From the IMG/VR virus record IMGVR_UViG_3300042564_002819, positions 248,001-312,000 of that record: a stretch of 64,000 nucleotides of DNA; one strand, 5' to 3'. The notes beneath the pieces are model-generated. The model did not search any database. It had not been told where the DNA came from and worked only from the letters and a program-made list of their open reading frames with translations. Of the stretch, positions 19,190-44,180 are shown piece by piece (the stretch's first letter is position 1; each line of letters opens with the position of its first letter). Both the position numbers and the translations under genes were made by a program.

Positions 19190-20323
19190 ATGCGTTTAGA
19201 TTTAGATATAAAATTAGATTATAAAGACGTTCTTATACGTCCCAAAAGAAGTACATTAGGAAGTCGTGCAGAAGTAGATCTAATACGTAACTTTACGTTT
19301 AGAAACTATGTTCCTGGATTTCCTGAAAACACAGAAGATTATCATTATCGTGGTATTCCTATTATGGCAGCCAACATGGACGGTGTTGGCACATTTGAAG
19401 TAGCAGATGCTCTTGCGAAGCAAGGACTGTTTACATGCCTTGTAAAAACTTACACAGAAAAAGAATTAGTCGATTATTTTAATCAAGAACCGGGCGGCAT
19501 TTATAGAACAGATCATGTTGCTATGAGTATCGGAGTAAGCAATGCAGATTACGAAAAGTTCTGTAAAGTTTATTTAAGTCTCGGTGCTAGATTAAAATAC
19601 CTCTGTATCGATGTTGCTAATGGATATACAGAAACTTTTGTTAATCATGTAAGAAACATTCGCGAACGCTATCCGGAAATAGTTATTATTGCCGGTAACG
19701 TAGTAACAGGCGAAATGACGGAGGAACTTATTCTTGCTGGAGCAGATATCGTTAAAGTTGGCATTGGTCCTGGTAGTGTTTGTACTACTCGTATACAGAC
19801 TGGTGTGGGTTATCCGCAATTATCAGCAGTTATCGAATGTGCAGATGCTGCTCATGGACTCGGTGGTCATATTATTGCTGACGGGGGTTGCACTTGTCCT
19901 GGCGACGTAGCCAAAGCATTTGCAGCCGGTGCTGACTTTGTAATGCTAGGTGGAATGTTAGCCGGGCATGATCAAGGCGGCGGCAACGTTATACACAAGG
20001 CTTTCAAGACTGGCGAAATACACTATGATAACGGCGACGAAATACTTGATATAAAAAAGTTTGTGCAGTTTTATGGTATGAGTTCAAAAGCTGCTAACGA
20101 TAAACACTTCGGTGGCTTAAAAGATTACAGAGCATCCGAAGGTAGAGAAGTTCTTGTACCTTACAGAGGTGATGTACAAGTAACTGTGCAAGAAATACTA
20201 GGCGGGCTGCGTAGTACTTGCACGTATGCAGGTGCTAAGACATTAAAACAACTTAGCAAATGCACAACCTTTGTACGTGTAACACAGCAATTTAATGCTG
20301 TTTATGCGAACAATGGTAAATAA
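19190..20323 (+). CDS. guaC: GMP reductase
   Basis: [41 protein letters not shown]. Confidence 0.95.
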
Positions 20324-20378
20324 AAGTGGAACGCCAAAACGGGTTCCGAAAGATCTTGCTTAAATAAGGAGATATAAA

Positions 20379-20813
20379 ATGACAAGACTTACAACATTAG
20401 ACCTACCCTCATTTCATCGTGCCACAGTTGGCTTTGACAGAATTTTTAATGAAATTGAACGTCAATTTGCCAATTCTCCAAATACCAACAACTATCCTCC
20501 ATACAACGTTGCTGAAATCAACGAAAACGAATGGATGATCAGTATTGCAGTTGCTGGCTTTGGAATGGACAATCTCGATATTGTACACGATAAAAATATC
20601 TTGACTGTTGAGGGCACATCTCCAAAAGGAGACGAGGAAGTAAAGTATCTACACAAGGGACTCGGAAGACGCAGTTTCCGTAGAAGCTTTACACTAGCCG
20701 ACTTTGTTGAAGTTGCAAACGCAACCCTTGAGCTCGGTATGCTAAATATTCATCTAAAGCGTAATGTTCCAGAAGAACTACAGCCGAAGAGAATTGAAAT
20801 TATTGCTAACTAA
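20379..20813 (+). CDS. Small heat-shock protein Hsp20 (IbpA-like)
   Basis: YPPYN, AVAGF, YLHKG, FRRSFTLAD, GMLNIHL. Confidence 0.95.
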   Translation: MTRLTTLDLPSFHRATVGFDRIFNEIERQFANSPNTNNYPPYNVAEINENEWMISIAVAGFGMDNLDIVHDKNILTVEGTSPKGDEEVKYLHKGLGRRSFRRSFTLADFVEVANATLELGMLNIHLKRNVPEELQPKRIEIIAN

Positions 20814-20820
20814 TGTCTAA

Positions 20821-20849
20821 TTGTTAGAGGGTGCAACACCCTCTAACAA
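20821..20849 (+). terminator. Stem-loop after hsp20
   Basis: TTGTTAGAGGGTG-CAA-CACCCTCTAACAA. Confidence 0.55.
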
Positions 20850-20866
20850 ACCTTGGAGAAAAATAA

Positions 20867-21199
20867 ATGACAAATGATGTATATAAACAAAAAGAACAAC
20901 TCGACATTGCTAAAGTTAATGAAAAAATAAAAGTTGATTATAAAGAACCGTCGAGATTTAAGGTTGTGTTTTTAAATGACGACCATACTCCAATGGAATT
21001 TGTAGTTATGTTATTAGTCAAACTTTTTAAACACTCTGAAGAAACTGCACACGCTCTTACTATGAAAATTCACGAAGAAGGTTCGGGAGTTGTTGGAGTT
21101 TACAGTTATGAAATTGCCGAAGAAAAGGCCATAGAAACAATTTCTGTTTGCAGAGATAACGGGTTTCCTTTAAGAATTAAGTTAGAGGAAGAAGCTTGA
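20867..21199 (+). CDS. clpS: Clp protease adaptor ClpS
   Basis: KVVFLNDDHTPMEFVV, IHEEG, YEIAE, FPL. Confidence 0.95.
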   Translation: MTNDVYKQKEQLDIAKVNEKIKVDYKEPSRFKVVFLNDDHTPMEFVVMLLVKLFKHSEETAHALTMKIHEEGSGVVGVYSYEIAEEKAIETISVCRDNGFPLRIKLEEEA

Positions 21200-21723
21200 A
21201 GTTAAAAGAACTAACATACGAAGTTCATCAACGTGCTGAACGTACCGAATTTGCACGAAATCTTCTTAAAGGGCTTTCTCCAGAAGAATACCATCGTTAT
21301 CTGTATAATCAGTATATGATATATTCTATACTTGAAGATGCTGCCAAGCATGTATTACCTGAACTAAAAGAAATCTATAGAGCAGAACGCATTTATGCAG
21401 ATATCAGAGAACTCGAACGAGAATACGCTATAGGCACCACACCCAGTCTCTTAATGCCAGTTGTGCGTGAATATGAAAAGCATATTATAAATCTAAATCG
21501 AGAAGGTATACTTGCTCACATTTACGTTCGTCATTTTGGCGATATGTATGGCGGCCAGATGATTAAGAAACGTAATCCAGGATCAGGAACTATGTATGAT
21601 TTTGATAACGTTGAAGAACTTAAAACTAAGGTTAGATCAATGCTGTCAGATGACATGGCAGAAGAAGCAAATCGTTGTTTTGAGTTTGCTATTCAATTGT
21701 TTACGGAATTAACCAATGAGTGA
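21196..21723 (+). CDS. Heme oxygenase (HemO/Ho1-like)
   Basis: LKELTYEVHQRAE, AHIYVRHFGDMYGGQMI. Confidence 0.9.
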   Translation: MKLKELTYEVHQRAERTEFARNLLKGLSPEEYHRYLYNQYMIYSILEDAAKHVLPELKEIYRAERIYADIRELEREYAIGTTPSLLMPVVREYEKHIINLNREGILAHIYVRHFGDMYGGQMIKKRNPGSGTMYDFDNVEELKTKVRSMLSDDMAEEANRCFEFAIQLFTELTNE

Positions 21724-22396
21724 AGTTTGGAATCAGTTAGTCAATCTTCAAGATAAAATTATATCTAAACTCAACTCGTGTGCCACAGAAGTATACGAGC
21801 CTGGCATGGATAGATTTAATCAGCCGGGCTGGGTGAATAGAGTTTGGCAAAACGACACAATTCGTCGTGCCCATGTTGATGTGGTTGATGCAAGATCAAC
21901 TAAAGGACTGTGGATGATGCATGTTTGTTTATTTCCACATTGCACAGATACTGCACCAATTTACGGGCTAGACATAATAGCAGGTAAAAATAAAGTTACA
22001 GGATTTTTTCACGATTTTAGTCCAACTGTAGCACCTAATCATACAATGATTATAAACTTTGGAAAAGTTGTATCTGAGTATGACTGGAAAAAAGAAAGAG
22101 AGCTTCCTGACTGGGCTAAAGCTATTTTTAGTCAGTATATGGTTGCTGTTGGTAATGTAAATACCAACGAAGAATTAGAATCGTTAATAGACTTAAGTCT
22201 TAACAATCTTGATGACTGGCTTGGATATTACAGATACACAAAATGCACTTACGAAGAAGGCGCGGCAGCACAAAATCGTTATGCATATTATCAAAAACAA
22301 AATCCGCATACACCAAGAACAATGACAGCTCTTGGACTAAACGAAGAAGATGTACAAGTTTTTGTACAGGAATGCTTGTTTCCTGATATAAAATAA
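21716..22396 (+). CDS. Ferredoxin-dependent bilin reductase (PcyX/PcyA-like)
   Basis: RRAH, MMHVCLFP, PIYGLD, FHDFSP, RELPDWA, QKQNPHT; coupled to heme oxygenase. Confidence 0.85.
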   Translation: MSEVWNQLVNLQDKIISKLNSCATEVYEPGMDRFNQPGWVNRVWQNDTIRRAHVDVVDARSTKGLWMMHVCLFPHCTDTAPIYGLDIIAGKNKVTGFFHDFSPTVAPNHTMIINFGKVVSEYDWKKERELPDWAKAIFSQYMVAVGNVNTNEELESLIDLSLNNLDDWLGYYRYTKCTYEEGAAAQNRYAYYQKQNPHTPRTMTALGLNEEDVQVFVQECLFPDIK

Positions 22397-22451
22397 TATT
22401 AGCATACATAGAAATGACTCCGTTAGTTAAATAATAATGGAGGGCATTCCA

Positions 22452-22907
22452 ATGAAAAAAATAATAATAATCGCATGTTTGATTGCGAATCCGGCCCTAG
22501 CGGATATCGTGTTTGAATTTAATTCCCCTGCTTTTAGCGGCAATGGATATAGTACACACGTTCTTACTATTGAACAGTTAGAGCAACAACGCAGAGATAA
22601 AATTAAAGCAGACGAGCAAGCAGAACTTGATCGCATTGAGCGTGAATATCGTAACAGTAACGCTTATAAATTTCAAAACAACTTAGAAAGTCGTATCTAC
22701 GCACAACTGTCAAAACAAATAGCAGATGCACTATTTGGCGAAGGCGGCACCATTACAATAGGAGAATGGGCAGAAGCAGAAACTCCATTCGGCGATAATA
22801 TTCGTTGGATGAGAGATGTTGATGACAGAATTTATATAGAGGTATACGACTCAAATGGAGAGTTAGTATCTAGCTTTGATGTACCAGTAGGGGAGTTTGC
22901 GTTCTAA
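22452..22907 (+). CDS. csgF: Curli assembly protein CsgF-like
   Basis: Signal peptide then VFEFNSPAFSG; upstream of csgG. Confidence 0.7.
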   Translation: MKKIIIIACLIANPALADIVFEFNSPAFSGNGYSTHVLTIEQLEQQRRDKIKADEQAELDRIEREYRNSNAYKFQNNLESRIYAQLSKQIADALFGEGGTITIGEWAEAETPFGDNIRWMRDVDDRIYIEVYDSNGELVSSFDVPVGEFAF

Positions 22908-23680
22908 TGAAAATACTATTATCTATATTGCTGGCCACATCTATATTAGCAAGTTGTTCATCTACAGTGAATAGAATTGAAAGTGAACCGCCGCAGGTTG
23001 TGATCACAGACGAAGAATACCTAAATGCACTTCCTCCTCTAGCAGGACCTATGGTAGCAGCAGTGTATCAATTTGAAGATAAAACAGGGCAGCGTAAACC
23101 TAGTGAACGCCTTGCAAATATCAGCACAGCCGTTACACAAGGTGCAAGTGAATACGTAATTAAAGCACTACGCGAAGTAGGCAACGGTACATGGTTTAAA
23201 GTTGTTGAACGTGTGGGATTAGAAAACTTGTCTAAAGAGCGTCAGATTATTAGACAGACCAGAGAAAGTGTAGGAGACGAAACTCCTCTAGCACCAATGA
23301 TGTTTGCAGGACTAATTGTAGAAGGTGCTATAGTTGGTTATGATTCAAATACTCTAACAGGCGGAGCGGGGGCACGCTATTTAGGTATAGGACCGAGCAC
23401 TCAATACACAGAAGATGTTATAACTGTAACAATGCGTTGTGTAAGTGTGCAGACCGGTGAAATATTAACCAGCACGGCGGTAACAAAAACAGTTGTAAGC
23501 ACTAGCACAGATATGGGGGTATTTCGCTTTATTGAGTTAGGCACACAAGCAGTTGAATTAGAAGTGGGCAACAGTCAAAACGAAAGCGTAAATCATGCTG
23601 TAAGATTGGCAATTCAAGCAGCAATAGTAGAAATGATAAAGGAAGGTGCGGATAACGGTATCTGGACCATCCAACAATAA
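22907..23680 (+). CDS. csgG: Curli secretion channel lipoprotein CsgG
   Basis: Lipobox LASC; AVYQFEDKTGQRKP, STAVTQG, WFKVVER, GAIVGYDSN, GARYLGIG. Confidence 0.92.
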   Translation: MKILLSILLATSILASCSSTVNRIESEPPQVVITDEEYLNALPPLAGPMVAAVYQFEDKTGQRKPSERLANISTAVTQGASEYVIKALREVGNGTWFKVVERVGLENLSKERQIIRQTRESVGDETPLAPMMFAGLIVEGAIVGYDSNTLTGGAGARYLGIGPSTQYTEDVITVTMRCVSVQTGEILTSTAVTKTVVSTSTDMGVFRFIELGTQAVELEVGNSQNESVNHAVRLAIQAAIVEMIKEGADNGIWTIQQ

Positions 23681-23719
23681 ACAGAGTAAGATAAAACTTA
23701 CCAATACGAGGGCAAAAAA

Positions 23720-24553
23720 ATGAAAAAGATTCTAACCACAGTGGCTTTCTCTATGTTGGCAACAACAGCGATAGCAAGTGAAGTATATATTGATCAAGCA
23801 GGTGGTGCATTGAATGTAGATGTGCTACAAGAAAATGGACTTAACCGTGTTAATAGAGAAGACAACCCTTTTGATATTGAAGGAAATGACATTGATATTA
23901 ACATAACTCAAAACGGCGACGGCAACGAAGCAGATTTTGAATTAGAATCAGGGGCAAATAATACTACACTGGTCTACAGTGCCGCTGGAGATTATAACAC
24001 TATAATTGGACAAATATTTGGCGGAATTTCAAATACATTTGATACTACTATTACTGGTAGTTCGAACGCTATTACATACTGTAGAGATTATACAAACAGT
24101 AATTGTAATGGTGTAATTGTTAACAATACCACAACTACAGTAGAACTAATAGGTAGTAATAACCAGTTGAACTTTGCATTAGACAGTGCAGATAGCACTA
24201 ATAATATAAAAATAGGACAAACTACTCCTAGCGATCAAAACGTGTTCAATCTTACACAAATTTCAACAGCAGGCTATGACTCTGTAACTGCTAACATTGA
24301 TGGAGATTCAAACACTACCGATATTACTCAAAATACCACAGGTGGAAACAATGTAGTAATTATGGACATCATTGGTGGAAACAACGTATTAGCATTTACT
24401 CAAACTGGAGCAGCAGGTTATAACAATATCACAATGGACATAACCGGAAACTCCAATGCATTTACGTTTGATCAACAGACTGCTATAGGATATACTTATA
24501 TCACTGGTGTAGTTGCTGGTAATTCAAATACTGTGAATATATTACAGAACTAA
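23720..24553 (+). CDS. Curlin-repeat secreted protein
   Basis: Signal peptide; repeated Q-x-G-x-x-N and G-x-x-N beta-arc units. Confidence 0.75.
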   Translation: MKKILTTVAFSMLATTAIASEVYIDQAGGALNVDVLQENGLNRVNREDNPFDIEGNDIDINITQNGDGNEADFELESGANNTTLVYSAAGDYNTIIGQIFGGISNTFDTTITGSSNAITYCRDYTNSNCNGVIVNNTTTTVELIGSNNQLNFALDSADSTNNIKIGQTTPSDQNVFNLTQISTAGYDSVTANIDGDSNTTDITQNTTGGNNVVIMDIIGGNNVLAFTQTGAAGYNNITMDITGNSNAFTFDQQTAIGYTYITGVVAGNSNTVNILQN

Positions 24554-24554
24554 T

Positions 24555-25649
24555 ATGTGGCGTTGGTTTGGAATAATGGTTATTATACCTAGCATAGCAT
24601 TTGCTGAAGTGGGCAGTATCACAGAGTTTGATGGCAATCCTGCAGGTGCTGTTCGTAGCAAAGAAGAACTTGTTTTTGAACAAGCAGGGTTCGGTGTGGA
24701 AATGCTAGACAAGTTGATTACTGCTCAAACTAATTTAGAAATTACATTTGAAGACGATTCAAAAGTAAGAATTACTGAACAAAGTGAATTAGTGATAGAC
24801 GATTTTGTATATGACCCAAACACCAGCACAGGAAGTATGAGTATGAAAGTTGCCCTCGGCACTGTACAAATGACCAGCGGTAAACTAGCTAAAACTAGCC
24901 GAGATCGTGTAAGTATAAACACGCCTACTGCTAGCATAACAGTTAGAGGTACTGATTTTTCAATGACTGTGGACGAGTTAGGTCGTAGTCTGATAATTCT
25001 GCTTCCAAGTTGCCCTGACGAAACACTCAACGAAGACGAATGTCCAGTGGGTGCTATTACAGTTAGTAACGCAGCAGGTAGTGTATCTCTTAACGAAGCA
25101 TACCAAGGAACTATGGTAAGCAGTATGGCAATGTTACCAAGCGATCCTCGTAGATTATTGTTACAAAGATCAAATATTAACAATGAATTAATCATTGTTC
25201 CTCCTAGTGAATTTCCAAACGGATTTGCTACTGAAGACGAAGAAGAAGAAATTAGAACAGGCCTTGATGTAGACTTTTTAGAATATCAAGAACTTAGCGT
25301 AAATTTATTAAACGACGATCTTCTTAACTTTTCACAATTAGACGTAAACAGGCTTAATAACAAATACTTGGATAACTTTTTAGATTTCACACCAGGCTTA
25401 GACGACAACGAACTAGATGAAGAAGAAAATACAATTTTACCAAACATACACAAATATCCATGGATGACATGGATTGCAAACGAAGAAAGCATATTTATAG
25501 ACAGTGATCGCCCTCCTCACATTGCTGTTCTAAATACCAGGGCAGACACACACGGAACTTACAGTCTTACACAAGACGACTACGTTGCAAACGTTCAAAT
25601 ACAAGACGGTGGCGACAACATCAATATTAAGGTGGTACAAAAACAATGA
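24555..25649 (+). CDS. FecR-domain periplasmic protein
   Basis: ITFEDDSKVRITEQSELVIDDFVYDP, TPTASITVRGTDF. Confidence 0.85.
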   Translation: MWRWFGIMVIIPSIAFAEVGSITEFDGNPAGAVRSKEELVFEQAGFGVEMLDKLITAQTNLEITFEDDSKVRITEQSELVIDDFVYDPNTSTGSMSMKVALGTVQMTSGKLAKTSRDRVSINTPTASITVRGTDFSMTVDELGRSLIILLPSCPDETLNEDECPVGAITVSNAAGSVSLNEAYQGTMVSSMAMLPSDPRRLLLQRSNINNELIIVPPSEFPNGFATEDEEEEIRTGLDVDFLEYQELSVNLLNDDLLNFSQLDVNRLNNKYLDNFLDFTPGLDDNELDEEENTILPNIHKYPWMTWIANEESIFIDSDRPPHIAVLNTRADTHGTYSLTQDDYVANVQIQDGGDNINIKVVQKQ

Positions 25650-27295
25650 AAACAATAATAAAAATAATCGCAACATTTTTTGTACTAACATTTGCCACAG
25701 CAGCAAACGCTGCAATTACAGATGGTAAATTTGGTATAGCACAAATATTTGACGTTCAATATTATTGGAATGGAACAACGCTTAATGCAAGCAACTTTAT
25801 TGCTCCATACGATAAGGACTTCAACACAGTAACAGCAACCTCCGGGCAGTATTTTGAATTTTTTGATTCAACAGTGCAACCGGGAAAACAAGGTCTAAGA
25901 TTAATGAATTCCAACGGAACACTGGATCGTATTATTCATGACTACGGAGACATTACAGCACTAGGCTCCGGCGCCATATTTTATATCGGCAGCGGATTCT
26001 TTGGTAATGTTATCTCGACAGCACAAGGTTATAACTATGGATCTAGTGCTTCGTTTACAAATATGGATACAAGTGTAGATTCAAGTGATTTAACAAGTTA
26101 CACTTTCGCAAGTTCGCAGCCGCTAGCAGCAGGACAAAGTGCTGCTCCAGCAGGTCCAACTTATACTAACCTAAACAGTACTATAACAACTGTTTATCCA
26201 ACTAGTACTAATACACCTGCAGGTGAAGAAGCCATTAAAGCAGTCGACGGCAGCGGCAGCACCAAGTATCTTAACTTTGACAGAGAAACAGCAGGTTTCA
26301 CTGTAAAATTAAGTGCAGGTCGTGTGGTAAAAGCATTGCAATTCACAACAGCAAACGATTTTGCATTGCGTGATCCAACTAAGTTTACACTTTATGGTTC
26401 AAACGATGGTGTTACTTGGACAGCAATTGTACAAGATCAACCTATTACACTGCCTAGCGGACGTGGTGTAACAATAGATCCTGTAGTTATTACAAACACA
26501 ACAGCATATGTTTATTACTTTATTACATTCCCTGAATTAAAGTCAACAACAGATCCTAGTTGTGCTAATCCAACTACACAACAACAGATACTTGCTTGCG
26601 ACAGTGTTCAGATTGCAGAAGTAATATTCTTGATGGAAGACGGCGATACCACTACCAGCACTGACCAAGGTTCAGGAAGTGTAAGCAACCCAGGTCCACA
26701 AGTACAAGTACCGTTAACCAGTATCACAAGTGTACAACAAGCACAAGTTGCAACAGCATTTGCTATTACAAGTGGCAACAATGTTGACTTTACTATTATA
26801 GGTAGTTCAAACACAGTTGACATTGAACAACTAAGCAATGGTAACTATGTATTACTTTACTTAAACGGTAGTTCAAACACACTGGATATTTCACAGAGTG
26901 GATCAAATGCTGATAGAAACTTTGCTGACATTAACATTGTAGGCAGCAACAACACTATGACATTTGAACAAAGTGGTAACAGCAACAAAACAGCATTTTT
27001 AGATATTGACGGTAGTTACGGAACATACAACATTACTCAAACAGGAACTGGACTACATCATTTAGATCTTACCAACGTCGGCGATGATGCTACAGTTACA
27101 GTATTGCAAGAAGGTGCAGGTAATCATCAAGCAATAGTAGAACTAGAAAATGCAGGCGGAAACTGGAACTTCAATCTTACACAGAGTGGAGATACAAGTC
27201 AGCTGTATAGTCTTCCAAATAACCTCAGTGACAATACTGTAGTAAATGGCGTTTGTACTAGCGGCACTTGCAATATGACAGTTAATCAACAATAA
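25646..27295 (+). CDS. Secreted protein with a discoidin (F5/8C)-like domain and C-terminal curlin repeats
   Basis: AVDGSGSTKYLNF...TANDFALRDPTKFTLYGSNDG; C-terminal GSSNT.DI.Q repeats. Confidence 0.75.
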   Translation: MKTIIKIIATFFVLTFATAANAAITDGKFGIAQIFDVQYYWNGTTLNASNFIAPYDKDFNTVTATSGQYFEFFDSTVQPGKQGLRLMNSNGTLDRIIHDYGDITALGSGAIFYIGSGFFGNVISTAQGYNYGSSASFTNMDTSVDSSDLTSYTFASSQPLAAGQSAAPAGPTYTNLNSTITTVYPTSTNTPAGEEAIKAVDGSGSTKYLNFDRETAGFTVKLSAGRVVKALQFTTANDFALRDPTKFTLYGSNDGVTWTAIVQDQPITLPSGRGVTIDPVVITNTTAYVYYFITFPELKSTTDPSCANPTTQQQILACDSVQIAEVIFLMEDGDTTTSTDQGSGSVSNPGPQVQVPLTSITSVQQAQVATAFAITSGNNVDFTIIGSSNTVDIEQLSNGNYVLLYLNGSSNTLDISQSGSNADRNFADINIVGSNNTMTFEQSGNSNKTAFLDIDGSYGTYNITQTGTGLHHLDLTNVGDDATVTVLQEGAGNHQAIVELENAGGNWNFNLTQSGDTSQLYSLPNNLSDNTVVNGVCTSGTCNMTVNQQ

Positions 27296-27311
27296 ATTTG
27301 TATACCACCTT

Positions 27312-27340
27312 AATGATAGGGCCTACGGGCCCTATCATTT
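27312..27340 (+). terminator. Intrinsic terminator (cUACGg loop)
   Basis: AATGATAGGGCC-TACG-GGCCCTATCATTTT. Confidence 0.8.
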
Positions 27341-27368
27341 TAAATAAATACGTTAGGGGGCAATAACA

Positions 27369-27707
27369 ATGGATTTAGTATACGGAATAGCATTGAGTTT
27401 TCATCTAGGAATGAACGAGGACTACAATAATTTGCATCCACATATTCGTTTACAAAACGATGACTTTATTGCAGGTGCTTACTACAATAGCGAAGATGCA
27501 TTAAGTGCTTATGCTGGGATTGAGCTAGGCAGCGGAAAATGGAATCACGAATTCGGTTTAGTATCTGGATACAATGAAAGCACTGTAATTCCTTTTGTTA
27601 GATCCACTTATGAATTAAATGATAATACAATAGGTTATATATCGCCAGGGTTCGAAGATAACAACATTGGTGTAGTATTAGGCATAGAATTTCAAATTAA
27701 AAAATGA
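27369..27707 (+). CDS. Small beta-barrel-like protein
   Basis: SFH...YNNLHP, GAYYNSE, GLVSGY, LGIEF. Confidence 0.55.
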   Translation: MDLVYGIALSFHLGMNEDYNNLHPHIRLQNDDFIAGAYYNSEDALSAYAGIELGSGKWNHEFGLVSGYNESTVIPFVRSTYELNDNTIGYISPGFEDNNIGVVLGIEFQIKK

Positions 27708-27943
27708 AGTGGCTGATCGATCTATTTAAAGGAAAAGAAGATGAAGTACACAGTGGATCATCGGACCTCCATATTAGAATTGCTGAAATCCAGACCCGCA
27801 TCGCCGCTGTTAGAAGCCGCAATGGCTGGGACAAAGAACCCTATAAAAATACTAAAATACAATCCCAACCAGTGGTGGCCCAGGAAAAACCTAAAGTAGG
27901 CAGCGAAGATTTAAAAGCTAAACTACTTGCTATAAAAAAATAA
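27704..27943 (+). CDS. Hypothetical protein
   Basis: ATGA overlap. Confidence 0.6.
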   Translation: MKWLIDLFKGKEDEVHSGSSDLHIRIAEIQTRIAAVRSRNGWDKEPYKNTKIQSQPVVAQEKPKVGSEDLKAKLLAIKK

Positions 27944-27950
27944 ATACAGT

Positions 27951-29990
27951 ATGAAAAAATTACTGTTATCGCCTGTTTGGAGCATTTTAGTATTAGTATT
28001 GTTGGCTTGGCTACAGTTTGCTAATCCTAGTTTTTTAGAAAGTCTACAGCTACGTTACTTTGACCAACTTATAGTAAATCAAGAACCTGTAGCTAACAAC
28101 GTTTACACAGTAAACATAGACGAAGCAAGTTTAAAGGCAAACGGACAATGGCCGTGGCCAAGAGGCGAATACGCCAAACTCATCGAAGAACTATATGCAC
28201 GTGGTGCAGGATTAGTTGTGTTCAACGTTCTAATGAGTGAAACAGATCGTGCAGGACAAGATGGCGTATTATCTACCACAATGAGCAACTATCCTGTTAT
28301 AGTTACAATGTTGGGTACAGAGGAAAACAAAAATGAACCAATCAATCCTGGTGCTAGTATTATTAATAGCGACTACATCGATCTTATTCCTTCCGTGCCT
28401 GGCATCACAGCAAACGTGTCAGATATTGAACGTGCGGCTGTTGGATCAGGAATTGTTAACACTTTTCCAGAAATAGACGGTGTTACAAGACGTGCTCCAC
28501 TAATACTAGAAAGCGGTGGAATACTGTATCCTAACGTTACTATGGAAGTGCTTCGTGTTCTTGCCGGCGATCCAAGTTTCCAAATTAAACTGTCACCAAT
28601 TGGTATAGACAAACTTCGTATTCCACAGTATGGTGTATTACAAACAGATGAAATCGGCAGAGTTTGGTTAGATTGGAGTCAAAATTTTTCCAGTTACAGT
28701 GCTGCTGAGTTGCCCGATGATTTTGCAGGCGGTATAGTTTTTGTAGGACCAACAGCAGCCGGCATTACACAACCAATTGCAACAGCCGCAGGCGGTATTT
28801 GGCCGCATGAACTACAAGCTATAATGCTAGGTACAGTGTTTAATCAAAGCAATATAAAACGTCCAGCATGGGCAACAGGTGCTGAATTGCTAGGATTTGT
28901 AATTTCTGGCATAGCTTTAATAATAGCAGCACGTTGGACCTATGCGGGCATAGGAATATTTTTAATACTAGTTGGAACATCAATCGGTGGCAGCATCTAT
29001 ATGTTCTCTGCTTATAACTTCTTACTAGACGGTTTTGTTCCGGCAGCATTCTTGTTGTTGGTAGGATTAGTAAGATATACTGTTAAGTTTGTAAGTGAGT
29101 TCTTACAAAAGCAAAAGATCAAAAAACAATTTGGTGGTTATGTGTCGCCTAAGATTGTTGATTTACTGGCTAAAGATCCGAGTGTAATAGAACGTGGAGT
29201 AAAGAAAAACATCTCTATTACTATGACTGATCTGCGTGGCTTTACTCCTCTTGGAGAAAGTTACGGTGCTGATGTTGAAGGATTGCGTCAAATCATGAAT
29301 GACTACATGGAAGCAATTACACAGCCAGTATTACGCAACGAAGGCACTATTATCAAATATATCGGTGATGCAAGTTTACATATAAACGGTGCACCATTTG
29401 ATCAAGATAATCATGAATGTGTTGCGGTAAAAACTGCAATTGAAATGATAGATGCTGTAGAGGTGTTTAATGAAGAACTTAAAGCAAAAGGTAAGCCACC
29501 CGTTGGCATGGGTGCTGGTATCAATACTGGTCCTACAGTTATTGGTAATATTGGCAGTTATAAGCGTTATGGTTATGACGTTTTAGGTGATAGTGTAAGC
29601 ACAGCCGCACGTCTTGAAGGACAAACCAAGCCCTATGGTGTTTTATTAATACTAGGACCAAAAACTGCCGAAGTAGCACGTCATTTCTATCACGTTGTAG
29701 AATTAGATCTATTAGCAGTCAAAGGTAAAACCGAAGCACTTCCTATTTACACAGTAATTTGGAGAGAAACACCCAACACTGAGTTTTGGCATCATCATGA
29801 AACATTCTTATCAGAATACAGATTAGCAAATTGGAAATCAGCTCTGGAACAAATTCAGTGGTTAAAAATTAATGGTCCTGTCACACTAGTCAAGTACTAC
29901 GAGATGATGGAAGAACGTATTGCTGATCTATCTAAGAAAAAAATACAGCCCGGAAAATGGGACGGAGTATTCAGAGCTACAAGTAAATAA
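27951..29990 (+). CDS. CHASE2-domain class III adenylate/guanylate cyclase
   Basis: GQWPWPR CHASE2 motif, three TM helices, TDLRGFT, KYIGDA, GINTG, GDSVSTAARLEG. Confidence 0.93.
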   Translation: MKKLLLSPVWSILVLVLLAWLQFANPSFLESLQLRYFDQLIVNQEPVANNVYTVNIDEASLKANGQWPWPRGEYAKLIEELYARGAGLVVFNVLMSETDRAGQDGVLSTTMSNYPVIVTMLGTEENKNEPINPGASIINSDYIDLIPSVPGITANVSDIERAAVGSGIVNTFPEIDGVTRRAPLILESGGILYPNVTMEVLRVLAGDPSFQIKLSPIGIDKLRIPQYGVLQTDEIGRVWLDWSQNFSSYSAAELPDDFAGGIVFVGPTAAGITQPIATAAGGIWPHELQAIMLGTVFNQSNIKRPAWATGAELLGFVISGIALIIAARWTYAGIGIFLILVGTSIGGSIYMFSAYNFLLDGFVPAAFLLLVGLVRYTVKFVSEFLQKQKIKKQFGGYVSPKIVDLLAKDPSVIERGVKKNISITMTDLRGFTPLGESYGADVEGLRQIMNDYMEAITQPVLRNEGTIIKYIGDASLHINGAPFDQDNHECVAVKTAIEMIDAVEVFNEELKAKGKPPVGMGAGINTGPTVIGNIGSYKRYGYDVLGDSVSTAARLEGQTKPYGVLLILGPKTAEVARHFYHVVELDLLAVKGKTEALPIYTVIWRETPNTEFWHHHETFLSEYRLANWKSALEQIQWLKINGPVTLVKYYEMMEERIADLSKKKIQPGKWDGVFRATSK

Positions 29991-30014
29991 GGAGCCAAAA
30001 GGCTCCTTATTTTT
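29986..30014. terminator. Bidirectional terminator between convergent genes
   Basis: AATAAGGAGCC-AAAA-GGCTCCTTATTTTT. Confidence 0.8.
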
Positions 30015-30031
30015 ATTAATGTAAAGTGTTA

Positions 30032-30367
30032 TTATGAACGACTCATATAAGCACTAGAACCAAAGAATGATGCTACTACACCAGCTTGTGCAATGTAGAA
30101 CATACTTAAAATGTTGTCTAATGCTGCTAGTCTGTCAATACCGATAAAAGGTAAAAATAGTAAAACTGTAAATACAACCATACTAAGCATAGCAACCCAT
30201 GCCATTCTTCTAAGTTGATCTTCTTTTTGATCTTTGTTTTCTAAGTCAACAATGCGTTCTGCTTTAGCAAGTTCTTCGTCGGAAACTACGCCATCGCCGT
30301 CGGTGTCAAACTTGTTAAATTGACTGTCTTCTTGTAGTGTCTTTGGTGTTCTTGGTGTTCTTGCCAT
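30032..30367 (-). CDS. EF-hand two-TM membrane protein (holin-like)
   Basis: DTDGDGVVSDEE loop; two hydrophobic helices. Confidence 0.7.
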   Translation of the reverse strand: MARTPRTPKTLQEDSQFNKFDTDGDGVVSDEELAKAERIVDLENKDQKEDQLRRMAWVAMLSMVVFTVLLFLPFIGIDRLAALDNILSMFYIAQAGVVASFFGSSAYMSRS

Positions 30368-30384
30368 TTCTGGATCTCCCTCTA

Positions 30385-30729
30385 TTATTTTTTTTTATCT
30401 TCTCTGCCGGTGCTGTTAAAAACTTGGCTACGGCTTTGATACTTGTTAATCAATTCGTCGAGTTCGTCTTTTTTGTCATCTGGAAGCGAATCTATGTGTT
30501 GTCGATATTCTAAAACCATTGTTAGCTTACTGTTTAAACGAATCATGTCGTTATCTAACATACGTACACGATCCACTAGTTTAATCAGCGTCCCCATTGT
30601 TTCACCAATCACAGGATCAATTTCTTCAGTTACCCATTTCCATATAAAGAAAACAAAGTAGCCCATTCCCATTGCTGCAATGATCGGAAATCCAAAGTCT
30701 TTAATAGCCTGTGCAATATCAAATTCCAT
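30385..30729 (-). CDS. Single-TM coiled-coil protein
   Basis: FGFPIIAA TM; LVDRVRMLDNDMIRL. Confidence 0.75.
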   Translation of the reverse strand: MEFDIAQAIKDFGFPIIAAMGMGYFVFFIWKWVTEEIDPVIGETMGTLIKLVDRVRMLDNDMIRLNSKLTMVLEYRQHIDSLPDDKKDELDELINKYQSRSQVFNSTGREDKKK

Positions 30730-31007
30730 TAGTCTCTCCTTGCATCGTTTTTGCCTTCGTTAGCAGCAATACGATCTATATTAGGTTTAACATTTAACGC
30801 ATAACTTAATAGTGCATCTATCTTAACTAAATCATTATTCATAGTTTGAACACGATTATCTAACTGTGCAATAATATTTTTTAGAGTTGTAACAGATCCT
30901 GTTACTCCTGCTAGAATAAACTTCAATGTTAAGAAAACAAAACCGCCGGCTGCTAATGCACCGGCAATTGGAAACCCTACTTCGCTTACTAATTGCAAAA
31001 AATCCAT
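30729..31007 (-). CDS. Single-TM coiled-coil protein, paralogue of neighbour
   Basis: VGFPIAGA TM; LDNRVQTMNNDLVKI. Confidence 0.75.
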   Translation of the reverse strand: MDFLQLVSEVGFPIAGALAAGGFVFLTLKFILAGVTGSVTTLKNIIAQLDNRVQTMNNDLVKIDALLSYALNVKPNIDRIAANEGKNDARRD

Positions 31008-31104
31008 TAAAACGCCCTCACGTTTTGCATAGTATTTAGCATAATGCGATTGTTTTTTATTGACAAAATGCTTAAATATACTACTATATTACAAAGGAGA
31101 CTGC

Positions 31105-32238
31105 ATGAACAATTTTATAGAAGATTTTATTAAAAAAAATACATTTCACAGACCGACTTTAGTGTTAGATATAAATGAAGTGGAAAAAAACTTCTATAAT
31201 CTTAAACGTGGGATGCCCGATGCTCACATACACTATGCTGTTAAAAGCAATCCGCATCCTGAAATACTAAAATGCTTAGTGCAACAAGGTTGCAAGTTTG
31301 ATGCAGCATCGATGGGAGAAATAGATGCTTGTTTAGAAGCAGGTGCAAAGCCCGAACATATCAGTTTTGGCAATACTGTAAAGCGTTGGCAAGACATCAA
31401 ATATGCACACTCTATAGGTATTGACCTTTTTGCAGCAGATGCAAGTGAAGAACTTGAAAAGATTGCAAATTACGCACCTAACTCTCGCGTGTTTATTCGT
31501 GTATTGATTGGGCAAACTGAAGCAGAATGGCCGTTATCACGAAAGTTTGGTTGCGATCCCCAAATGGTTCTTGAGCTAATGGGATATGCTACAGACCTAG
31601 GTCTTAAGCCAGTTGGTATTAGTTGGCACATTGGTTCACAAACAAAACATCCTGAAATGTGGTTCGACACACTAGAAATGATGGCTAACCTTTGGGATGA
31701 AGCCTGCGGTTTTGGATACGATTTATCGTTGGTAAACATCGGCGGCGGATTTCCTGCATACTACGGTGTTGATATAACTCCGCCAGAAGAATACGGTAGA
31801 AAATTAATGGATCGTGTTCGTAAGCAATTTCCAGGTGCAGACTACATTATGGTCGAACCGGGTCGCGGATTAGTAGGCAGTGCTGGTGCTATTGCTGCTG
31901 AAGTGTTATTGGTTAGCAAGAAGTCATCCTACGAAACAGTGCGTTGGGTTTATTTAAACATAGGAAGATTTAGTGGATTGGCTGAAACCGAAGGCGAAGC
32001 TATTAAATATCAATTTTCTATACCAGGTAAAGAAAACTCTACTACAGGACCATGTATTCTTGCAGGTCCTACTTGCGATAGTGCAGATGTACTATATGAA
32101 AAGAACAAGGTTCATTTGCCAGTTGACCTTTGCAGTGGCGATCGATTTATTATACGAAACTGCGGGGCTTACACCAGCACCTACAGCACTATTGCGTTTA
32201 ACGGGTTTCCGCCGTTAGCTGTTGTAGTTTGCAAATGA
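31105..32238 (+). CDS. Ornithine/lysine decarboxylase (fold III PLP)
   Basis: AAGGAG SD; HYAVKSN, FDAAS, KFG, HIGSQ, NIGGGF, EPGR, GPTCDS, GAYT. Confidence 0.93.
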   Translation: MNNFIEDFIKKNTFHRPTLVLDINEVEKNFYNLKRGMPDAHIHYAVKSNPHPEILKCLVQQGCKFDAASMGEIDACLEAGAKPEHISFGNTVKRWQDIKYAHSIGIDLFAADASEELEKIANYAPNSRVFIRVLIGQTEAEWPLSRKFGCDPQMVLELMGYATDLGLKPVGISWHIGSQTKHPEMWFDTLEMMANLWDEACGFGYDLSLVNIGGGFPAYYGVDITPPEEYGRKLMDRVRKQFPGADYIMVEPGRGLVGSAGAIAAEVLLVSKKSSYETVRWVYLNIGRFSGLAETEGEAIKYQFSIPGKENSTTGPCILAGPTCDSADVLYEKNKVHLPVDLCSGDRFIIRNCGAYTSTYSTIAFNGFPPLAVVVCK

Positions 32239-40751: not shown

Positions 40752-40838
40752 GGTCGGTGGCCCGGATGGTAAGGGGATGGACTGCAACTCCATAGCACTG
40801 CACGACAGTAATCAGTTCGATTCTGATACCGACCTCCA
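40752..40838 (+). tRNA. tRNA-Cys(GCA) with long variable arm
   Basis: GGTCGGT/ACCGACC, U73, encoded CCA; ATGGA-CTGCAAC-TCCAT. Confidence 0.88.
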
Positions 40839-40843
40839 CAATT

Positions 40844-40920
40844 GGTGCCGTAACTCAGTTGGTCAGAGTGCATCGCTCATAACGATGAAGTCGGTGGTTC
40901 AAATCCACCCGGCACCACCA
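40844..40920 (+). tRNA. tRNA(CAT), elongator Met (Ile2 not excluded)
   Basis: GGTGCCG/CGGCACC; CATCG-CTCATAA-CGATG; CCA. Confidence 0.9.
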
Positions 40921-40925
40921 AAATT

Positions 40926-41002
40926 GGGACATTGGACTTCTTGGCGAAGGTCGCCGCCCTTTCAAGGCGGAGAAACGGGTTCGAAACCCGTATGTCCTAC
41001 CA
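40926..41002 (+). tRNA. tRNA-Glu(TTC)
   Basis: CCGCC-CTTTCAA-GGCGG; TTCGAAA T-loop; CCA. Confidence 0.9.
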
Positions 41003-41043
41003 AAATAGATCAAGCCTAGTCGATCTCGAAAATCACTAGGCCC

Positions 41044-41109
41044 GCTCCTGAGGATCAAGCCATCGGAAGGTTCGAGACTTCCTTTGCAGGGTCGTCACCT
41101 GCCAGGAGT
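41044..41109 (+). ncRNA. Candidate T-loop-containing junction RNA
   Basis: GCTCCTG/CAGGAGT closing GGAAG-GTTCGAGA-CTTCC and GCAGG-GTCGTCA-CCTGC. Confidence 0.4.
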
Positions 41110-41118
41110 AACATACAT

Positions 41119-41203
41119 GGGAGAGACGCCTCAAGGTGAGGCAGTGGATTGTAAATCCATCGCGGCAACGCACGGACGGGTTCGATTCCCTCCTCTCCCA
41201 CCA
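41119..41203 (+). tRNA. tRNA-Tyr(GTA)
   Basis: GGGAGAG/CTCTCCC; GTGGA-TTGTAAA-TCCAT; long variable arm; CCA. Confidence 0.9.
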
Positions 41204-41209
41204 AAATTA

Positions 41210-41285
41210 GGGTCTCTGGTATAGCTGGTGCGTACGGCTGCCTGAAGAGCAGTAGGACACGGTTCGATTCCGTGGGGACCCGCCA
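41210..41285 (+). tRNA. tRNA-Phe(GAA)
   Basis: GGGTCTC/GGGACCC; GCTGC-CTGAAGA-GCAGT; CCA. Confidence 0.88.
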
Positions 41286-41320
41286 AGAATTATACTACCA
41301 TAAACACGAAAGAAAATAAA

Positions 41321-41467: not shown

Positions 41468-41494
41468 CGCAGAAGATTATGACAAACGCAACAT

Positions 41495-41684: not shown

Positions 41685-41689
41685 AATAT

Positions 41690-41765: not shown

Positions 41766-41786
41766 AAATTAGTAGGAAGACAGCCA

Positions 41787-44179: not shown

Positions 44180-44180
44180 A

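What the first reader, a model, noticed from the sequence alone, without database searches (positions are those of the whole stretch)
22452..31007. Curli secretion + FecR + CHASE2 cyclase: a possible phage trans-envelope signalling system
Seen: csgF-csgG-curlin-FecR-curlin/discoidin, then a small barrel, a CHASE2 cyclase and three convergent membrane genes (one EF-hand, two paralogues). Known: curli-like genes occur in some marine myophages, and FecR and CHASE2-cyclase genes co-occur in bacterial envelope-sensing loci. Inference: a surface fibre with a carbohydrate-binding tip could signal through FecR to a cyclase, for example sensing contact or superinfection to time lysis, or aggregating hosts.
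Basis: partly seen in the sequence, partly recalled or inferred. Interest (0 to 1): 0.75.

Follow-up and report, generated by a model that had tools for sequence, protein, structure and literature searches.

The report
Phage curli secretion module with cyclase
A 330-kb marine phage carries the curli-secretion, FecR-like and CHASE2 adenylate-cyclase gene cluster already published for SAR11 and OM43 phages, so the cluster is real and widespread but not new, and its function is still untested.

Summary
Window 22437-31007 encodes csgF, csgG, a curlin, a periplasmic FecR-domain protein, a second curlin with an F5/8C (CBM32-like) domain, a small 8-stranded barrel, a 79-aa ORF and a CHASE2 class III cyclase. 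Three convergent membrane genes follow.

The cluster is not new. The same csgF-csgG-curlin-FecR-curlin-cyclase order is annotated in Melnitz and HTVC008M and described by Wittmers 2022 (PMC9599517).

New here:
- It sits in a 330-kb T4-like jumbo phage.
- The two paralogous small membrane proteins (phrog_18771) are core parts: found in 35 and 32 of 37 csgG-anchored loci.
- The EF-hand gene, the barrel and the 79-aa ORF are accessory.
- Bacterial csgFG loci lack FecR and the cyclase, whereas FecR-CHASE2 pairs are common in bacteria. The phage cluster is therefore a chimera.
- FecR's phylogeny follows CsgF/CsgG, and the cyclase has been swapped between backgrounds.
- The main phage clade has Ser in place of the catalytic Asn.
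- No cNMP receptor was found in the phage or in two SAR11 genomes.

Trans-envelope signalling is plausible, because S. meliloti CHASE2 cyclases need the outer-membrane protein NsrA. It is unproven: the FecR-CHASE2 complex prediction gave no answer.

The parts
22437..22907 (+). csgF (T8SS accessory protein). The likely true start is 22452. A signal peptide is followed by the motif FEFNSPAFSGNG.
   Evidence: PF10614, 5.5e-12. phrog_35372, 3e-40. Present in 37 of 37 csgG-anchored loci.
22907..23680 (+). csgG, the outer-membrane lipoprotein secretion channel.
   Evidence: PF03783, 1.1e-51. Lipobox Cys17 is invariant.
23720..24553 (+). Curlin-repeat protein 1. It has a signal peptide and six G-x-x-N-x5-Q type repeats in the C-terminal half.
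   Evidence: Curlin_rpt, 8.2e-5, above the cut-off. Repeat listing. Present in 37 of 37 loci.
24555..25649 (+). Periplasmic FecR-domain protein. It has a signal peptide, a FecR juxtamembrane-type beta domain (about residues 20-190, with invariant VRGTDF and two Cys), an acidic low-confidence linker and a conserved C-terminal beta region.
   Evidence: PF04773, 3.9e-10. Alignment. The AF2 N-domain matches the PupR C-terminal signalling domain 6ovm_R, Z 11.5, and 4m0h, Z 10.2. Present in 37 of 37 loci.
25646..27295 (+). Curlin-repeat protein 2. It has a signal peptide, an unassigned N-terminal region, an F5/8 type C (CBM32-like) domain at about residues 185-320, and C-terminal curlin repeats.
   Evidence: Curlin_rpt, 5.5e-8, and F5_F8_type_C, 5.7e-6. 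7nsn, E 3.7e-14. The long form (549-566 aa) occurs only in the window's near relatives L004-L009. Elsewhere the protein is 227-441 aa.
27369..27707 (+). Accessory small 8-stranded beta-barrel protein (PagP/OmpX-like fold) with no signal peptide.
   Evidence: AF2 pLDDT 90. Foldseek hits to transmembrane barrels. phrog_3600, PagP-like, 3e-9. ESM atlas PagP 0.93. Present in 6 of 37 loci.
27704..27943 (+). Accessory 79-aa basic ORF with no TM segment. Function unknown.
   Evidence: No Pfam or PHROG family. Present in 2 of 37 loci.
27951..29990 (+). CHASE2 class III nucleotide cyclase. Layout: TM1 (4-22), periplasmic CHASE2 (23-307), TM2-4 (308-374), cytoplasmic cyclase domain. The Lys/Asp pair predicts adenylate specificity. 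The transition-state Asn is replaced by Ser.
   Evidence: PF05226, 1e-37, and PF00211, 2.5e-16. Hydrophobic segments. Active-site alignment to 2w01 and 1wc0.
29985..30012 (.). 12-bp stem-loop with T runs between the convergent cyclase and EF-hand genes. It is a likely two-way terminator that ends the + strand operon.
30032..30367 (-). EF-hand plus transmembrane protein. It is a neighbour, not a conserved part of the module.
   Evidence: EF-hand_5, 26.3 bits. Present in 3 of 37 loci. Its homologues in Melnitz and HTVC008M lie beside tape-measure and baseplate-hub genes.
30385..30729 (-). m114, a small bitopic membrane protein (N-terminal TM plus a helical tail). It is a paralogue of m92 and a core part of the module.
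   Evidence: phrog_18771, 3e-29. Present in 35 of 37 loci. It always follows m92.
30729..31007 (-). m92, a small bitopic membrane protein and the most conserved protein of the module (82-93% identical where CsgG and the cyclase are 40-60%). It ends in the motif DGKxDARRD.
   Evidence: tblastn against 50,697 phage records hits only the six records that carry the module.

Best explanation
This is a copy of the published 'viral type VIII secretion' module of marine phages, here in a 330-kb T4-like jumbo phage. It has three blocks that stay linked but recombine: (1) csgF-csgG-curlin-FecR(-curlin 2); (2) a CHASE2 adenylate cyclase; (3) the membrane pair m92/m114.

Most likely working:
- After infection, the Sec system exports CsgG, CsgF, both curlins and the FecR-like protein.
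- CsgG and CsgF form an outer-membrane channel that the host lacks.
- The curlins pass through it and build an amyloid-like surface fibre. In this lineage one subunit also carries a CBM32-like sugar-binding domain. The fibre changes the infected cell's surface (adhesion, aggregation or masking).
- The FecR-like protein belongs to the secretion block as a periplasmic adaptor. It may stand in for the missing CsgE. It is also the best candidate for the periplasmic partner of the CHASE2 domain.
- The cyclase, probably together with m92/m114 in the inner membrane, then converts an envelope or secretion state into cAMP.

Shown here: gene content, export signals, topology, largely intact catalytic residues, linkage, the chimeric origin and the block-wise phylogeny. 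Inferred: fibre formation, the adaptor role, any FecR-CHASE2 contact, the product, the role of m92/m114 and the downstream effect.
For: - Domains and export signals.
- The same gene order is annotated in Melnitz and HTVC008M and described in PMC9599517.
- Linkage: of 37 csgG-anchored loci, CsgF 37, curlin 1 37, FecR 37, curlin 2 37, cyclase 36, m114 35, m92 32. In 76 m92-anchored loci the pair lies beside csgF, or next to the cyclase gene, wherever enough sequence is held.
- Chimera: seven bacterial csgFG loci of the class of G003 (a genome labelled Rickettsiales) carry curlins but no FecR, CHASE2 or m-pair within 10 kb. FecR-domain genes adjoin CHASE2 cyclases in Myxococcota, Caulobacterales, Planctomycetia, Spirochaetales, Omnitrophota and others. 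In SAR11 the neighbour is a CHASE2-PP2C protein.
- In one marine bacterial MAG labelled Rickettsiales, a giant FecR protein, TolC/HlyD, a CHASE2 cyclase and an m92/m114 pair lie together without a T8SS.
- The FecR N-domain has the fold of the PupR signalling domain, Z 11.5.
- Block structure: CsgF, CsgG and FecR distance matrices correlate at 0.87-0.91. The cyclase active-site type needs 1 change on the cyclase tree and 5 on the T8SS+FecR tree.
- Precedent for an outer-membrane protein feeding a CHASE2 cyclase: NsrA with CyaD1/D2/K (PMC7529298, PMC13001267).
- Some bacterial FecR-CHASE2 loci carry a TPR/Slam-like outer-membrane barrel gene or an MscS-cNMP channel gene next door.
Against: - No fibre has been seen. 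Buchholz et al. saw no clumping of Melnitz-infected cells (PMC9004378).
- No CsgE was found.
- The FecR-CHASE2 complex prediction gave no answer.
- The cyclase has moved between T8SS-FecR backgrounds. Per PMC9599517 it is missing from some podophage modules, so FecR cannot work only through it.
- In the window's clade the catalytic Asn is Ser. From my own knowledge of the mammalian N1025S mutant, this may lower activity.
- The host of this jumbo phage is unknown.
Confidence: 0.45

Rival explanations
1. A surface fibre with a carbohydrate-binding tip senses contact or superinfection. It passes the signal through FecR to the CHASE2 cyclase, and cAMP then times lysis, possibly through the holin-like pair m92/m114.
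For: - All parts lie in the right compartments.
- An outer-membrane protein is needed by CHASE2 cyclases in S. meliloti (PMC7529298).
- m92 resembles YvrJ and BhlA/UviB holin-like peptides by language-model features, 0.82-0.89, a lead only.
- In two deltaproteobacterial loci the gene next to FecR-CHASE2-AC is a cNMP-binding MscS channel, that is, a membrane effector.
- The phage is T4-like with rIIA. T4 is known to time lysis from a periplasmic cue (own knowledge).
Against: - The CBM32-like domain is confined to the window's near relatives, so it cannot be the general input.
- FecR's phylogeny is uncoupled from the cyclase.
- The complex job gave no answer.
- m92 is absent from all other phages in the 50,697-record set, so it is not a general holin.
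- No link to lysis genes was seen in the window.
Confidence: 0.15
2. The model of Wittmers et al. FecR, the cyclase and a 'histidine kinase' are regulators that switch curli production on, FecR through iron and the cyclase through cAMP, as CsgD and CRP do in enterobacteria.
For: - The genes are linked.
- The model is proposed in PMC9599517.
- cAMP-CRP control of csgD is established in E. coli (own knowledge).
Against: - The FecR protein has a signal peptide but no anti-sigma domain, no membrane anchor and no detectable STN subdomain.
- The genome has no STN or TonB-dependent receptor and no cNMP_binding protein.
- Two SAR11 genomes have no cNMP_binding protein either.
- The only small genes at the position of the reported 'HK' are m92/m114. 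They are 92-114 aa, m92 has no histidine, and neither has a kinase domain. That they are the reported HK is my inference.
Confidence: 0.08
3. The model of Buchholz et al. CsgG/CsgF has been repurposed as a gated outer-membrane pore (secretin- or pinholin-like) for lysis timing or uptake, and no fibre is made.
For: - The model is proposed from structural modelling in PMC9004378.
- CsgE is missing.
- No aggregation was seen in Melnitz cultures (PMC9004378).
- m92/m114 are holin-like by a weak lead.
Against: - Two curlin-repeat proteins with signal peptides are conserved in 37 of 37 loci.
- They pass Pfam's Curlin_rpt cut-off.
- That paper stated that csgA/B are lacking.
- The CsgF N-terminal motif is kept.
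Confidence: 0.1
4. There is no functional coupling. The T8SS-FecR block, the cyclase and the m-pair are separate auxiliary genes that happen to share a variable island.
For: - The three blocks have incongruent trees.
- A contig with the cyclase and m-pair shows no curli genes within its 4.7 kb.
- L182 has the T8SS-FecR block without the cyclase.
- The region is described as hypervariable in PMC7029224.
Against: - Linkage holds in 36 of 37 loci across three different gene arrangements and in phages of about 140 to 370 kb.
- FecR-CHASE2 adjacency recurs in unrelated bacteria.
- One bacterial locus unites FecR, cyclase and m-pair.
Confidence: 0.15

Closest known systems
Viral T8SS (curli) module of pelagiphages and the OM43 phage Melnitz (Zaragoza-Solas 2020, PMC7029224; Buchholz 2022, PMC9004378; Wittmers 2022, PMC9599517)
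   Same: The gene set and order csgF-csgG-curlin-FecR-curlin-CHASE2 cyclase are the same. Proteins are 35-53% identical to those of Melnitz and HTVC008M, and m92 is 82% identical to its Melnitz homologue.
   Different: - The genome is 330 kb, against 141-147 kb.
- The m92/m114 pair lies downstream and convergent, rather than upstream of csgF.
- Curlin 2 carries a CBM32-like insertion.
- There are extra barrel and 79-aa genes.
- The cluster sits next to a hemO/bilin-reductase cassette.
- The cyclase has the Ser variant, shared with Melnitz but not with HTVC008M.
Bacterial curli / type VIII secretion system (CsgA, B, E, F, G)
   Same: It has the CsgG lipoprotein channel, CsgF, and Sec-exported curlin-repeat subunits. 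The closest bacterial csgFG loci found (same class as G003) have the same core.
   Different: CsgE was not found. CsgC, CsgD and CsgH were not searched for. The FecR, CHASE2 cyclase and m-pair genes are absent from the bacterial loci examined.
FecA-FecR-FecI / PupB-PupR cell-surface signalling
   Same: The N-terminal domain has the fold of the FecR/PupR periplasmic juxtamembrane subdomain (Z 11.5), with the Pfam FecR motif VRGTDF.
   Different: It has no cytoplasmic anti-sigma domain, no transmembrane anchor and no detectable STN subdomain. The genome has no TonB-dependent transducer. It works at most like the periplasmic half of FecR.
S. meliloti NsrA - CyaD1/CyaD2/CyaK (CHASE2 cyclases) - Clr pathway
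   Same: An outer-membrane protein is required for a CHASE2 adenylate cyclase in the inner membrane to respond to an external protein signal (PMC7529298, PMC13001267). It is the only tested model of trans-envelope input to CHASE2 that I found.
   Different: The outer-membrane partner there is a large beta-barrel protein, not CsgG. The output is read by the CRP-type regulator Clr, for which no counterpart was found here.
LysM-FecR + CHASE2 histidine kinase operon (Burkholderia 'BiofilmReg', P. aeruginosa PA4035-type; PMC5192318)
   Same: A secreted FecR-domain protein is encoded next to a CHASE2 sensor. I found the same pairing with cyclase or PP2C outputs in many phyla.
   Different: The output domain differs, there is no LysM domain, and the bacterial operons have no secretion system.

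Membership tests
Viral T8SS + FecR + cyclase module (Wittmers 2022) | csgF, csgG, a curlin-repeat gene, FecR, a second curlin and an adenylate cyclase in one syntenic cluster in a marine phage | tested here: met
Viral T8SS + FecR + cyclase module (Wittmers 2022) | One or two small genes called 'histidine kinase' preceding csgF | tested here: inconclusive
   The m92/m114 pair occupies that position in Melnitz, HTVC008M and many contigs. It has no kinase features. That it is the paper's HK is my inference, because the figures are not held.
Curli / type VIII secretion system | CsgG outer-membrane lipoprotein channel | tested here: met
   PF03783, 1e-51, with an invariant lipobox Cys.
Curli / type VIII secretion system | CsgF with its N-terminal channel-binding motif | tested here: met
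   PF10614, 5.5e-12. The mature N-terminus is DIVFEFNSPAFSGNG. The comparison with E. coli CsgF is from memory.
Curli / type VIII secretion system | Secreted subunits made of curlin repeats | tested here: met
   Both pass the Curlin_rpt cut-off. Both have signal-like N-termini. Repeats are listed.
Curli / type VIII secretion system | CsgE periplasmic adaptor | tested here: not met
   No PF10627 match in the 330-kb genome. By published surveys alphaproteobacterial systems also lack it (own knowledge).
Curli / type VIII secretion system | Amyloid fibres on the cell surface | not testable with these tools
   Needs expression, Congo red/ThT, EM.
FecR-type anti-sigma regulator | FecR periplasmic domain | tested here: met
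   PF04773, 3.9e-10. Fold match to PupR, Z 11.5.
FecR-type anti-sigma regulator | N-terminal cytoplasmic anti-sigma domain and a transmembrane anchor | tested here: not met
   The protein starts with a signal-peptide-like segment directly followed by the FecR domain.
FecR-type anti-sigma regulator | A partner TonB-dependent transducer with an STN domain | tested here: not met
   No PF07660 and no PF00593 in the genome. An ECF sigma factor was not searched for.
CHASE2 class III adenylate cyclase | CHASE2 domain between TM1 and three further TM helices, followed by a cytoplasmic cyclase domain | tested here: met
CHASE2 class III adenylate cyclase | The full catalytic set: two metal Asp, substrate Lys plus Asp/Thr, transition-state Asn and Arg | tested here: not met
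   Asp, Asp, Lys, Asp and Arg are present, but the Asn is Ser (GDSVSTAARLE). It aligns to the Asn of 2w01 and 1wc0. The Ser is conserved in 40 of 55 typed loci, and all bacterial neighbours of FecR keep Asn. Activity is untested.
PagP/OmpX-type small outer-membrane barrel (for the 112-aa protein) | Eight-stranded antiparallel barrel with a hydrophobic outside | tested here: met
   AF2 pLDDT 90, Foldseek hits, phrog_3600. The alternating pattern was read from the sequence.
PagP/OmpX-type small outer-membrane barrel (for the 112-aa protein) | A Sec signal peptide for export | tested here: not met
   Strand 1 starts at residue 2. None of the 14 homologues has a signal peptide.
Holin (for m92/m114) | A small membrane protein that is required for lysis and adjoins lysis genes | tested here: inconclusive
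   Only language-model likeness to BhlA/YvrJ, 0.82-0.89. No endolysin is adjacent. The family is restricted to module carriers.

The most novel reading that the evidence does not exclude
The eight conserved genes form one phage-built, envelope-spanning device. Its parts would be a CsgG/CsgF channel and fibre in the outer membrane, a FecR-like periplasmic link, and a CHASE2 cyclase with the m92/m114 pair in the inner membrane. The device would report surface events (contact, fibre load or superinfection). It would act through cAMP on a non-CRP target such as the holin-like pair, setting the time of lysis in hosts that have no cAMP signalling of their own.
Probability: 0.12. Interest if true: 0.85.

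Novelty: new member of a known kind. Interest (0 to 1): 0.45.

Why it matters
The module is globally abundant. Wittmers et al. put viral curli proteins at about 0.1% of assembled viral proteins in GOV2.0. Here the FecR protein alone gave more than 6,500 database clusters, and csgG gave at least 581 viral contig matches. The module gives infected SAR11-type cells functions they lack: two SAR11 genomes searched have no class III cyclase or cNMP_binding protein, and published work reports no T8SS in SAR11. Its purpose is unknown.

This analysis narrows the question in four ways.
- It separates the core (eight genes) from the accessories.
- It shows that the 'FecR' is not an iron regulator but the periplasmic half of a widespread FecR-CHASE2 sensor pair.
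- It flags the overlooked m92/m114 pair as the most conserved part.
- It shows that no standard cAMP receptor is available.

Each point is directly testable with the cultured phages Melnitz and HTVC008M.

Tried and rejected
- **Complex prediction.** The job on mature FecR (18-364) with the CHASE2 periplasmic domain (23-307) returned 'no answer', score 0.00. It is not evidence either way.
- **FecR C-terminus as a curlin repeat.** The FecR C-terminus (…GGDNINIKVVQKQ) looked like one curlin repeat that could dock onto the fibre. Pfam finds no Curlin_rpt in ten homologues. hhalign against the curlins gives only 8-10% probability, P about 0.003-0.005. The AF2 model is low-confidence there. Not supported.
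- **Transcription evidence.** No RNA run holds this DNA. Only two read-sized contigs, about 99% identical, at 25424-25556 and 25702-25835, appear in two aquatic metatranscriptomes. They could be DNA carry-over.
- **Expression timing.** There is no T4-type late promoter (TATAAATA) upstream of csgF, and the sigma-70-like sites are not above the shuffled expectation.
- **Nucleotide search.** Megablast against phage records found nothing.
- **Names for the m92/m114 family.** There are 837 representative clusters. The ten whose members I looked up are unnamed or 'hypothetical'. Two of three context look-ups hit contigs too short to help.
- I rebuilt it without those rows.
- **Neighbour tally.** A Pfam tally of 61 neighbours of bacterial FecR-CHASE2 pairs showed no further recurrent family.
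- **Distance-matrix correlation.** This is a noisy measure. The two domains of the same cyclase correlate at only 0.44. I therefore relied on trees and AU tests instead.
- **Cyanophage reading.** The idea, suggested by hemO and the bilin reductase, was rejected because the genome has no psbA.

Full report
**What is there.** The region holds a + strand run of eight genes ending at a strong stem-loop terminator (29985-30012), followed by three convergent genes.

Pfam confirms the following:
- CsgF, 22437-22907
- CsgG, 22907-23680
- Curlin-repeat protein, 23720-24553
- FecR-domain protein, 24555-25649
- Second curlin-repeat protein, 25646-27295
- CHASE2 + class III cyclase, 27951-29990
- EF-hand protein, 30032-30367 (- strand)

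The middle of the second curlin scores just under Pfam's F5/8C cut-off. It matches the equivalent domain of a GH92 mannosidase (7nsn) at E 3.7e-14.

The 112-aa ORF (27369-27707) folds with pLDDT 90 into eight antiparallel strands. Its best structural matches are small transmembrane barrels, and it hits a PagP-like PHROG. It has no signal peptide.

The two small - strand genes (30385-30729 and 30729-31007, here m114 and m92) are paralogues of one PHROG of unknown function. Each has one N-terminal hydrophobic helix.

CsgF, CsgG (lipobox), both curlins and the FecR protein have signal-like N-termini. The cyclase has one TM helix, a periplasmic CHASE2 domain, three more TM helices and a cytoplasmic catalytic domain.

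**The genome.** The window is part of a 330,024-bp IMG/VR virus record, 93% complete by CheckV. It has T4-type genes: rIIA, RnlA and class I ribonucleotide reductase. It has no psbA. Its rIIA is only 31-38% identical to that of any isolate. It is therefore an uncultured T4-like jumbo phage of unknown host. Other carriers of the module include contigs of 349-372 kb.

**It is a known module.** tblastn of the cyclase, CsgG and m92 against 50,697 phage records finds the same six records: four Melnitz strains (host OM43) and two HTVC008M entries (host SAR11). The only extra hit was a 1.5-kb Salmonella fragment, for CsgG. Their GenBank annotation shows the same order csgF-csgG-curlin-FecR-curlin-cyclase.

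The literature covers it:
- Zaragoza-Solas 2020 reported csgF/csgG in pelagimyophages and proposed 'sibling capture'.
- Buchholz 2022 proposed a repurposed lysis-timing pore.
- Wittmers 2022 described the full set, including FecR, an adenylate cyclase and a 'histidine kinase', in podo- and myo-pelagiphages. They found it worldwide and found it expressed.

**Core versus accessory.** I anchored three scans of IMG/VR, on the cyclase, CsgG and m92. I scored every locus with HMMs built from the module.

Of 37 csgG-anchored loci with at least 4 kb upstream and 9 kb downstream, the counts are:

| Gene | Loci (of 37) |
|---|---|
| CsgF | 37 |
| Curlin 1 | 37 |
| FecR | 37 |
| Curlin 2 | 37 |
| Cyclase | 36 |
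| m114 | 35 |
| m92 | 32 |
| Barrel (112 aa) | 6 |
| 79-aa ORF | 2 |
| EF-hand gene | 3 |

In 76 m92-anchored loci, m92 is followed by m114 wherever the locus continues. The pair lies either just upstream of csgF or next to the cyclase gene, usually facing its 3' end. m92 is 82-93% identical where CsgG and the cyclase are 40-60% identical.

The EF-hand homologues of Melnitz and HTVC008M lie among baseplate genes, so that gene is only a neighbour here.

By position and number, m92/m114 are probably the 'HK, sometimes two' of Wittmers et al. They are 92-114 aa, m92 has no histidine, and no kinase domain is detectable.

**Origin: a chimera.** The seven closest bacterial csgG loci among 401 sampled genomes have csgF and curlin-like genes but no FecR, CHASE2 or m-pair within 10 kb. 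The sample was drawn from the class of G003, a genome labelled Rickettsiales.

A scan of species-representative genomes with the FecR alignment gave the converse picture:
- Eleven hits were phage contigs binned into MAGs.
- Of the 69 bacterial loci, 27 have a CHASE2 gene within 10 kb and none has csgG.
- The pair FecR then CHASE2-cyclase is directly adjacent in Myxococcota, Caulobacterales, Planctomycetia, Spirochaetales, Omnitrophota and others.
- In SAR11 single-cell genomes, a FecR gene lies 1.4 kb from a CHASE2-PP2C phosphatase gene.
- Some of these loci add a TPR/Slam-like outer-membrane barrel gene upstream, or a cNMP-binding MscS channel gene downstream.

One marine bacterial contig (from a MAG labelled Rickettsiales) with housekeeping genes has this order: giant FecR protein, TolC, HlyD, CHASE2 cyclase, m92 homologue, m114 homologue. 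The signalling set therefore exists with a different secretion system. The m-pair was found in only that one genome of the 401.

**The FecR protein is not an iron regulator.** Its N-domain model matches the juxtamembrane subdomain of the PupR signalling domain (6ovm, Z 11.5) and 4m0h (Z 10.2), well above the next hit. It lacks the anti-sigma domain and the membrane anchor. No STN or TonB-dependent receptor is encoded in the genome.

**The cyclase.** Both metal Asp residues, the substrate Lys and the Arg are present. In the window's clade and Melnitz, the substrate position is Asp and the transition-state Asn is Ser. HTVC008M, L038 and all FecR-adjacent bacterial enzymes keep the class IIIb pattern Lys, Ser/Thr, Asn, Arg. 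The Ser form is one clade (40 of 55 typed loci) and is conserved, so it is a variant rather than decay. Its activity is unknown.

**Block-wise evolution.**
- On trees of 58 loci, the cyclase type needs one change on the cyclase tree.
- It needs five changes on the CsgF+CsgG+FecR tree, against 13.3 when labels are shuffled.
- The T8SS+FecR data reject a single clade of Ser-type loci (delta lnL 410, p-AU 2e-69). So do FecR alone (p 1e-64) and the m-pair (p 0.005).
- CsgF, CsgG and FecR distances correlate at 0.87-0.91.

FecR therefore travels with the secretion genes, while the cyclase and the m-pair are exchanged among backgrounds. All three blocks stay linked through three different gene arrangements. 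Recombination between neighbouring genes of co-infecting phages can produce this pattern without breaking function. The result weakens a tightly co-adapted FecR-CHASE2 pair but does not exclude one.

**What reads the signal?** No cNMP_binding domain is encoded in the phage. In two SAR11 genomes I found neither a cNMP_binding protein nor a class III cyclase. If cAMP is made, its target is non-canonical. This is the main unexplained point.

**Verdict.** The trans-envelope signalling idea is reasonable given the tested NsrA/CHASE2-cyclase precedent in S. meliloti and the bacterial FecR-CHASE2 pairing. No result here shows a signal path from fibre to cyclase, and the single complex prediction gave no answer.

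My best reading is a curli-type surface-fibre system joined to an envelope-sensing cyclase. FecR would act on the secretion side as an adaptor and possible link, and m92/m114 would be unrecognised core membrane partners.

Noticed in passing
window 19190-22396: A block of IMPDH/GMP-reductase-like, HSP20, ClpS, heme oxygenase and ferredoxin-dependent bilin reductase genes lies directly upstream of csgF. The block is conserved in the window's clade (L010-L022, L027). A hemO + bilin reductase two-gene cassette is the PcyX type known from uncultured marine phages (PMC11480375).
   Followed up: partly
window 27369-27707: The 112-aa protein is predicted with high confidence to be an 8-stranded barrel with a hydrophobic outside and a polar, His-rich inside (PagP-like). 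Neither it nor any of 14 homologues has a signal peptide. How it would reach a membrane is unexplained.
   Followed up: partly
window 29151-29990 (cyclase domain): A conserved active-site variant: the transition-state Asn is Ser and the class IIIb Ser/Thr is Asp. It defines one large phage clade that includes Melnitz. HTVC008M and the bacterial relatives keep the canonical residues.
   Followed up: yes
L077 6409-8424 and 9836-11371 (SAR11 single-cell genome); also L074, L081, L091, L093 and others: SAR11 genomes encode their own CHASE2-SpoIIE (PP2C phosphatase) sensor with a FecR-domain gene 1.4 kb downstream. The host lineage of the cultured pelagiphage therefore has a related envelope sensor with a different output.
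   Followed up: partly
L052 5210-15365 (contig of a marine MAG labelled Rickettsiales): A bacterial locus holds a 1317-aa FecR-domain protein, TolC-like and HlyD-like genes, a CHASE2 cyclase and an m92/m114 pair. The signalling set is thus coupled to a type I-like secretion system instead of curli. The contig appears twice in that assembly.
   Followed up: partly
L068 13735-15189 and L109 16843-18288: In two deltaproteobacterial MAGs, the gene next to the FecR-CHASE2-cyclase pair is an MscS-type channel with a cNMP-binding domain, a likely direct effector of the cyclase.
   Followed up: no
L041-L051 (genome contigs): Eleven contigs filed in MAGs of Rhodobacteraceae, Pelagibacter, Luteolibacter, Legionellales, Flavobacteriaceae, Polynucleobacter, Pirellulales and others carry genes of the phage module, most of them most or all of it. 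They look like phage contigs binned into bacterial genomes.
   Followed up: partly
window 31060-32238: An ornithine/arginine/DAP decarboxylase-like PLP enzyme (PF02784, 6e-51) diverges from m92. It is a polyamine-type auxiliary gene.
   Followed up: no
window 40752-48898: Twelve tRNA genes (Cys, Met, Glu, Phe, Lys, Ile, His, three Arg, two Leu) lie in an 8-kb stretch with raised G+C.
   Followed up: no
window 50650-59340: The stretch holds rIIA (712 aa), a 1019-aa protein with a short sigma-factor-like stretch, and an ADP-ribosylglycohydrolase-like gene (phrog_6572).
   Followed up: no
window 25424-25556 and 25702-25835: Two read-sized contigs, about 99% identical, from two aquatic metatranscriptome runs cover the FecR 3' end and the curlin 2 5' end. 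This is weak and does not show transcription.
   Followed up: partly
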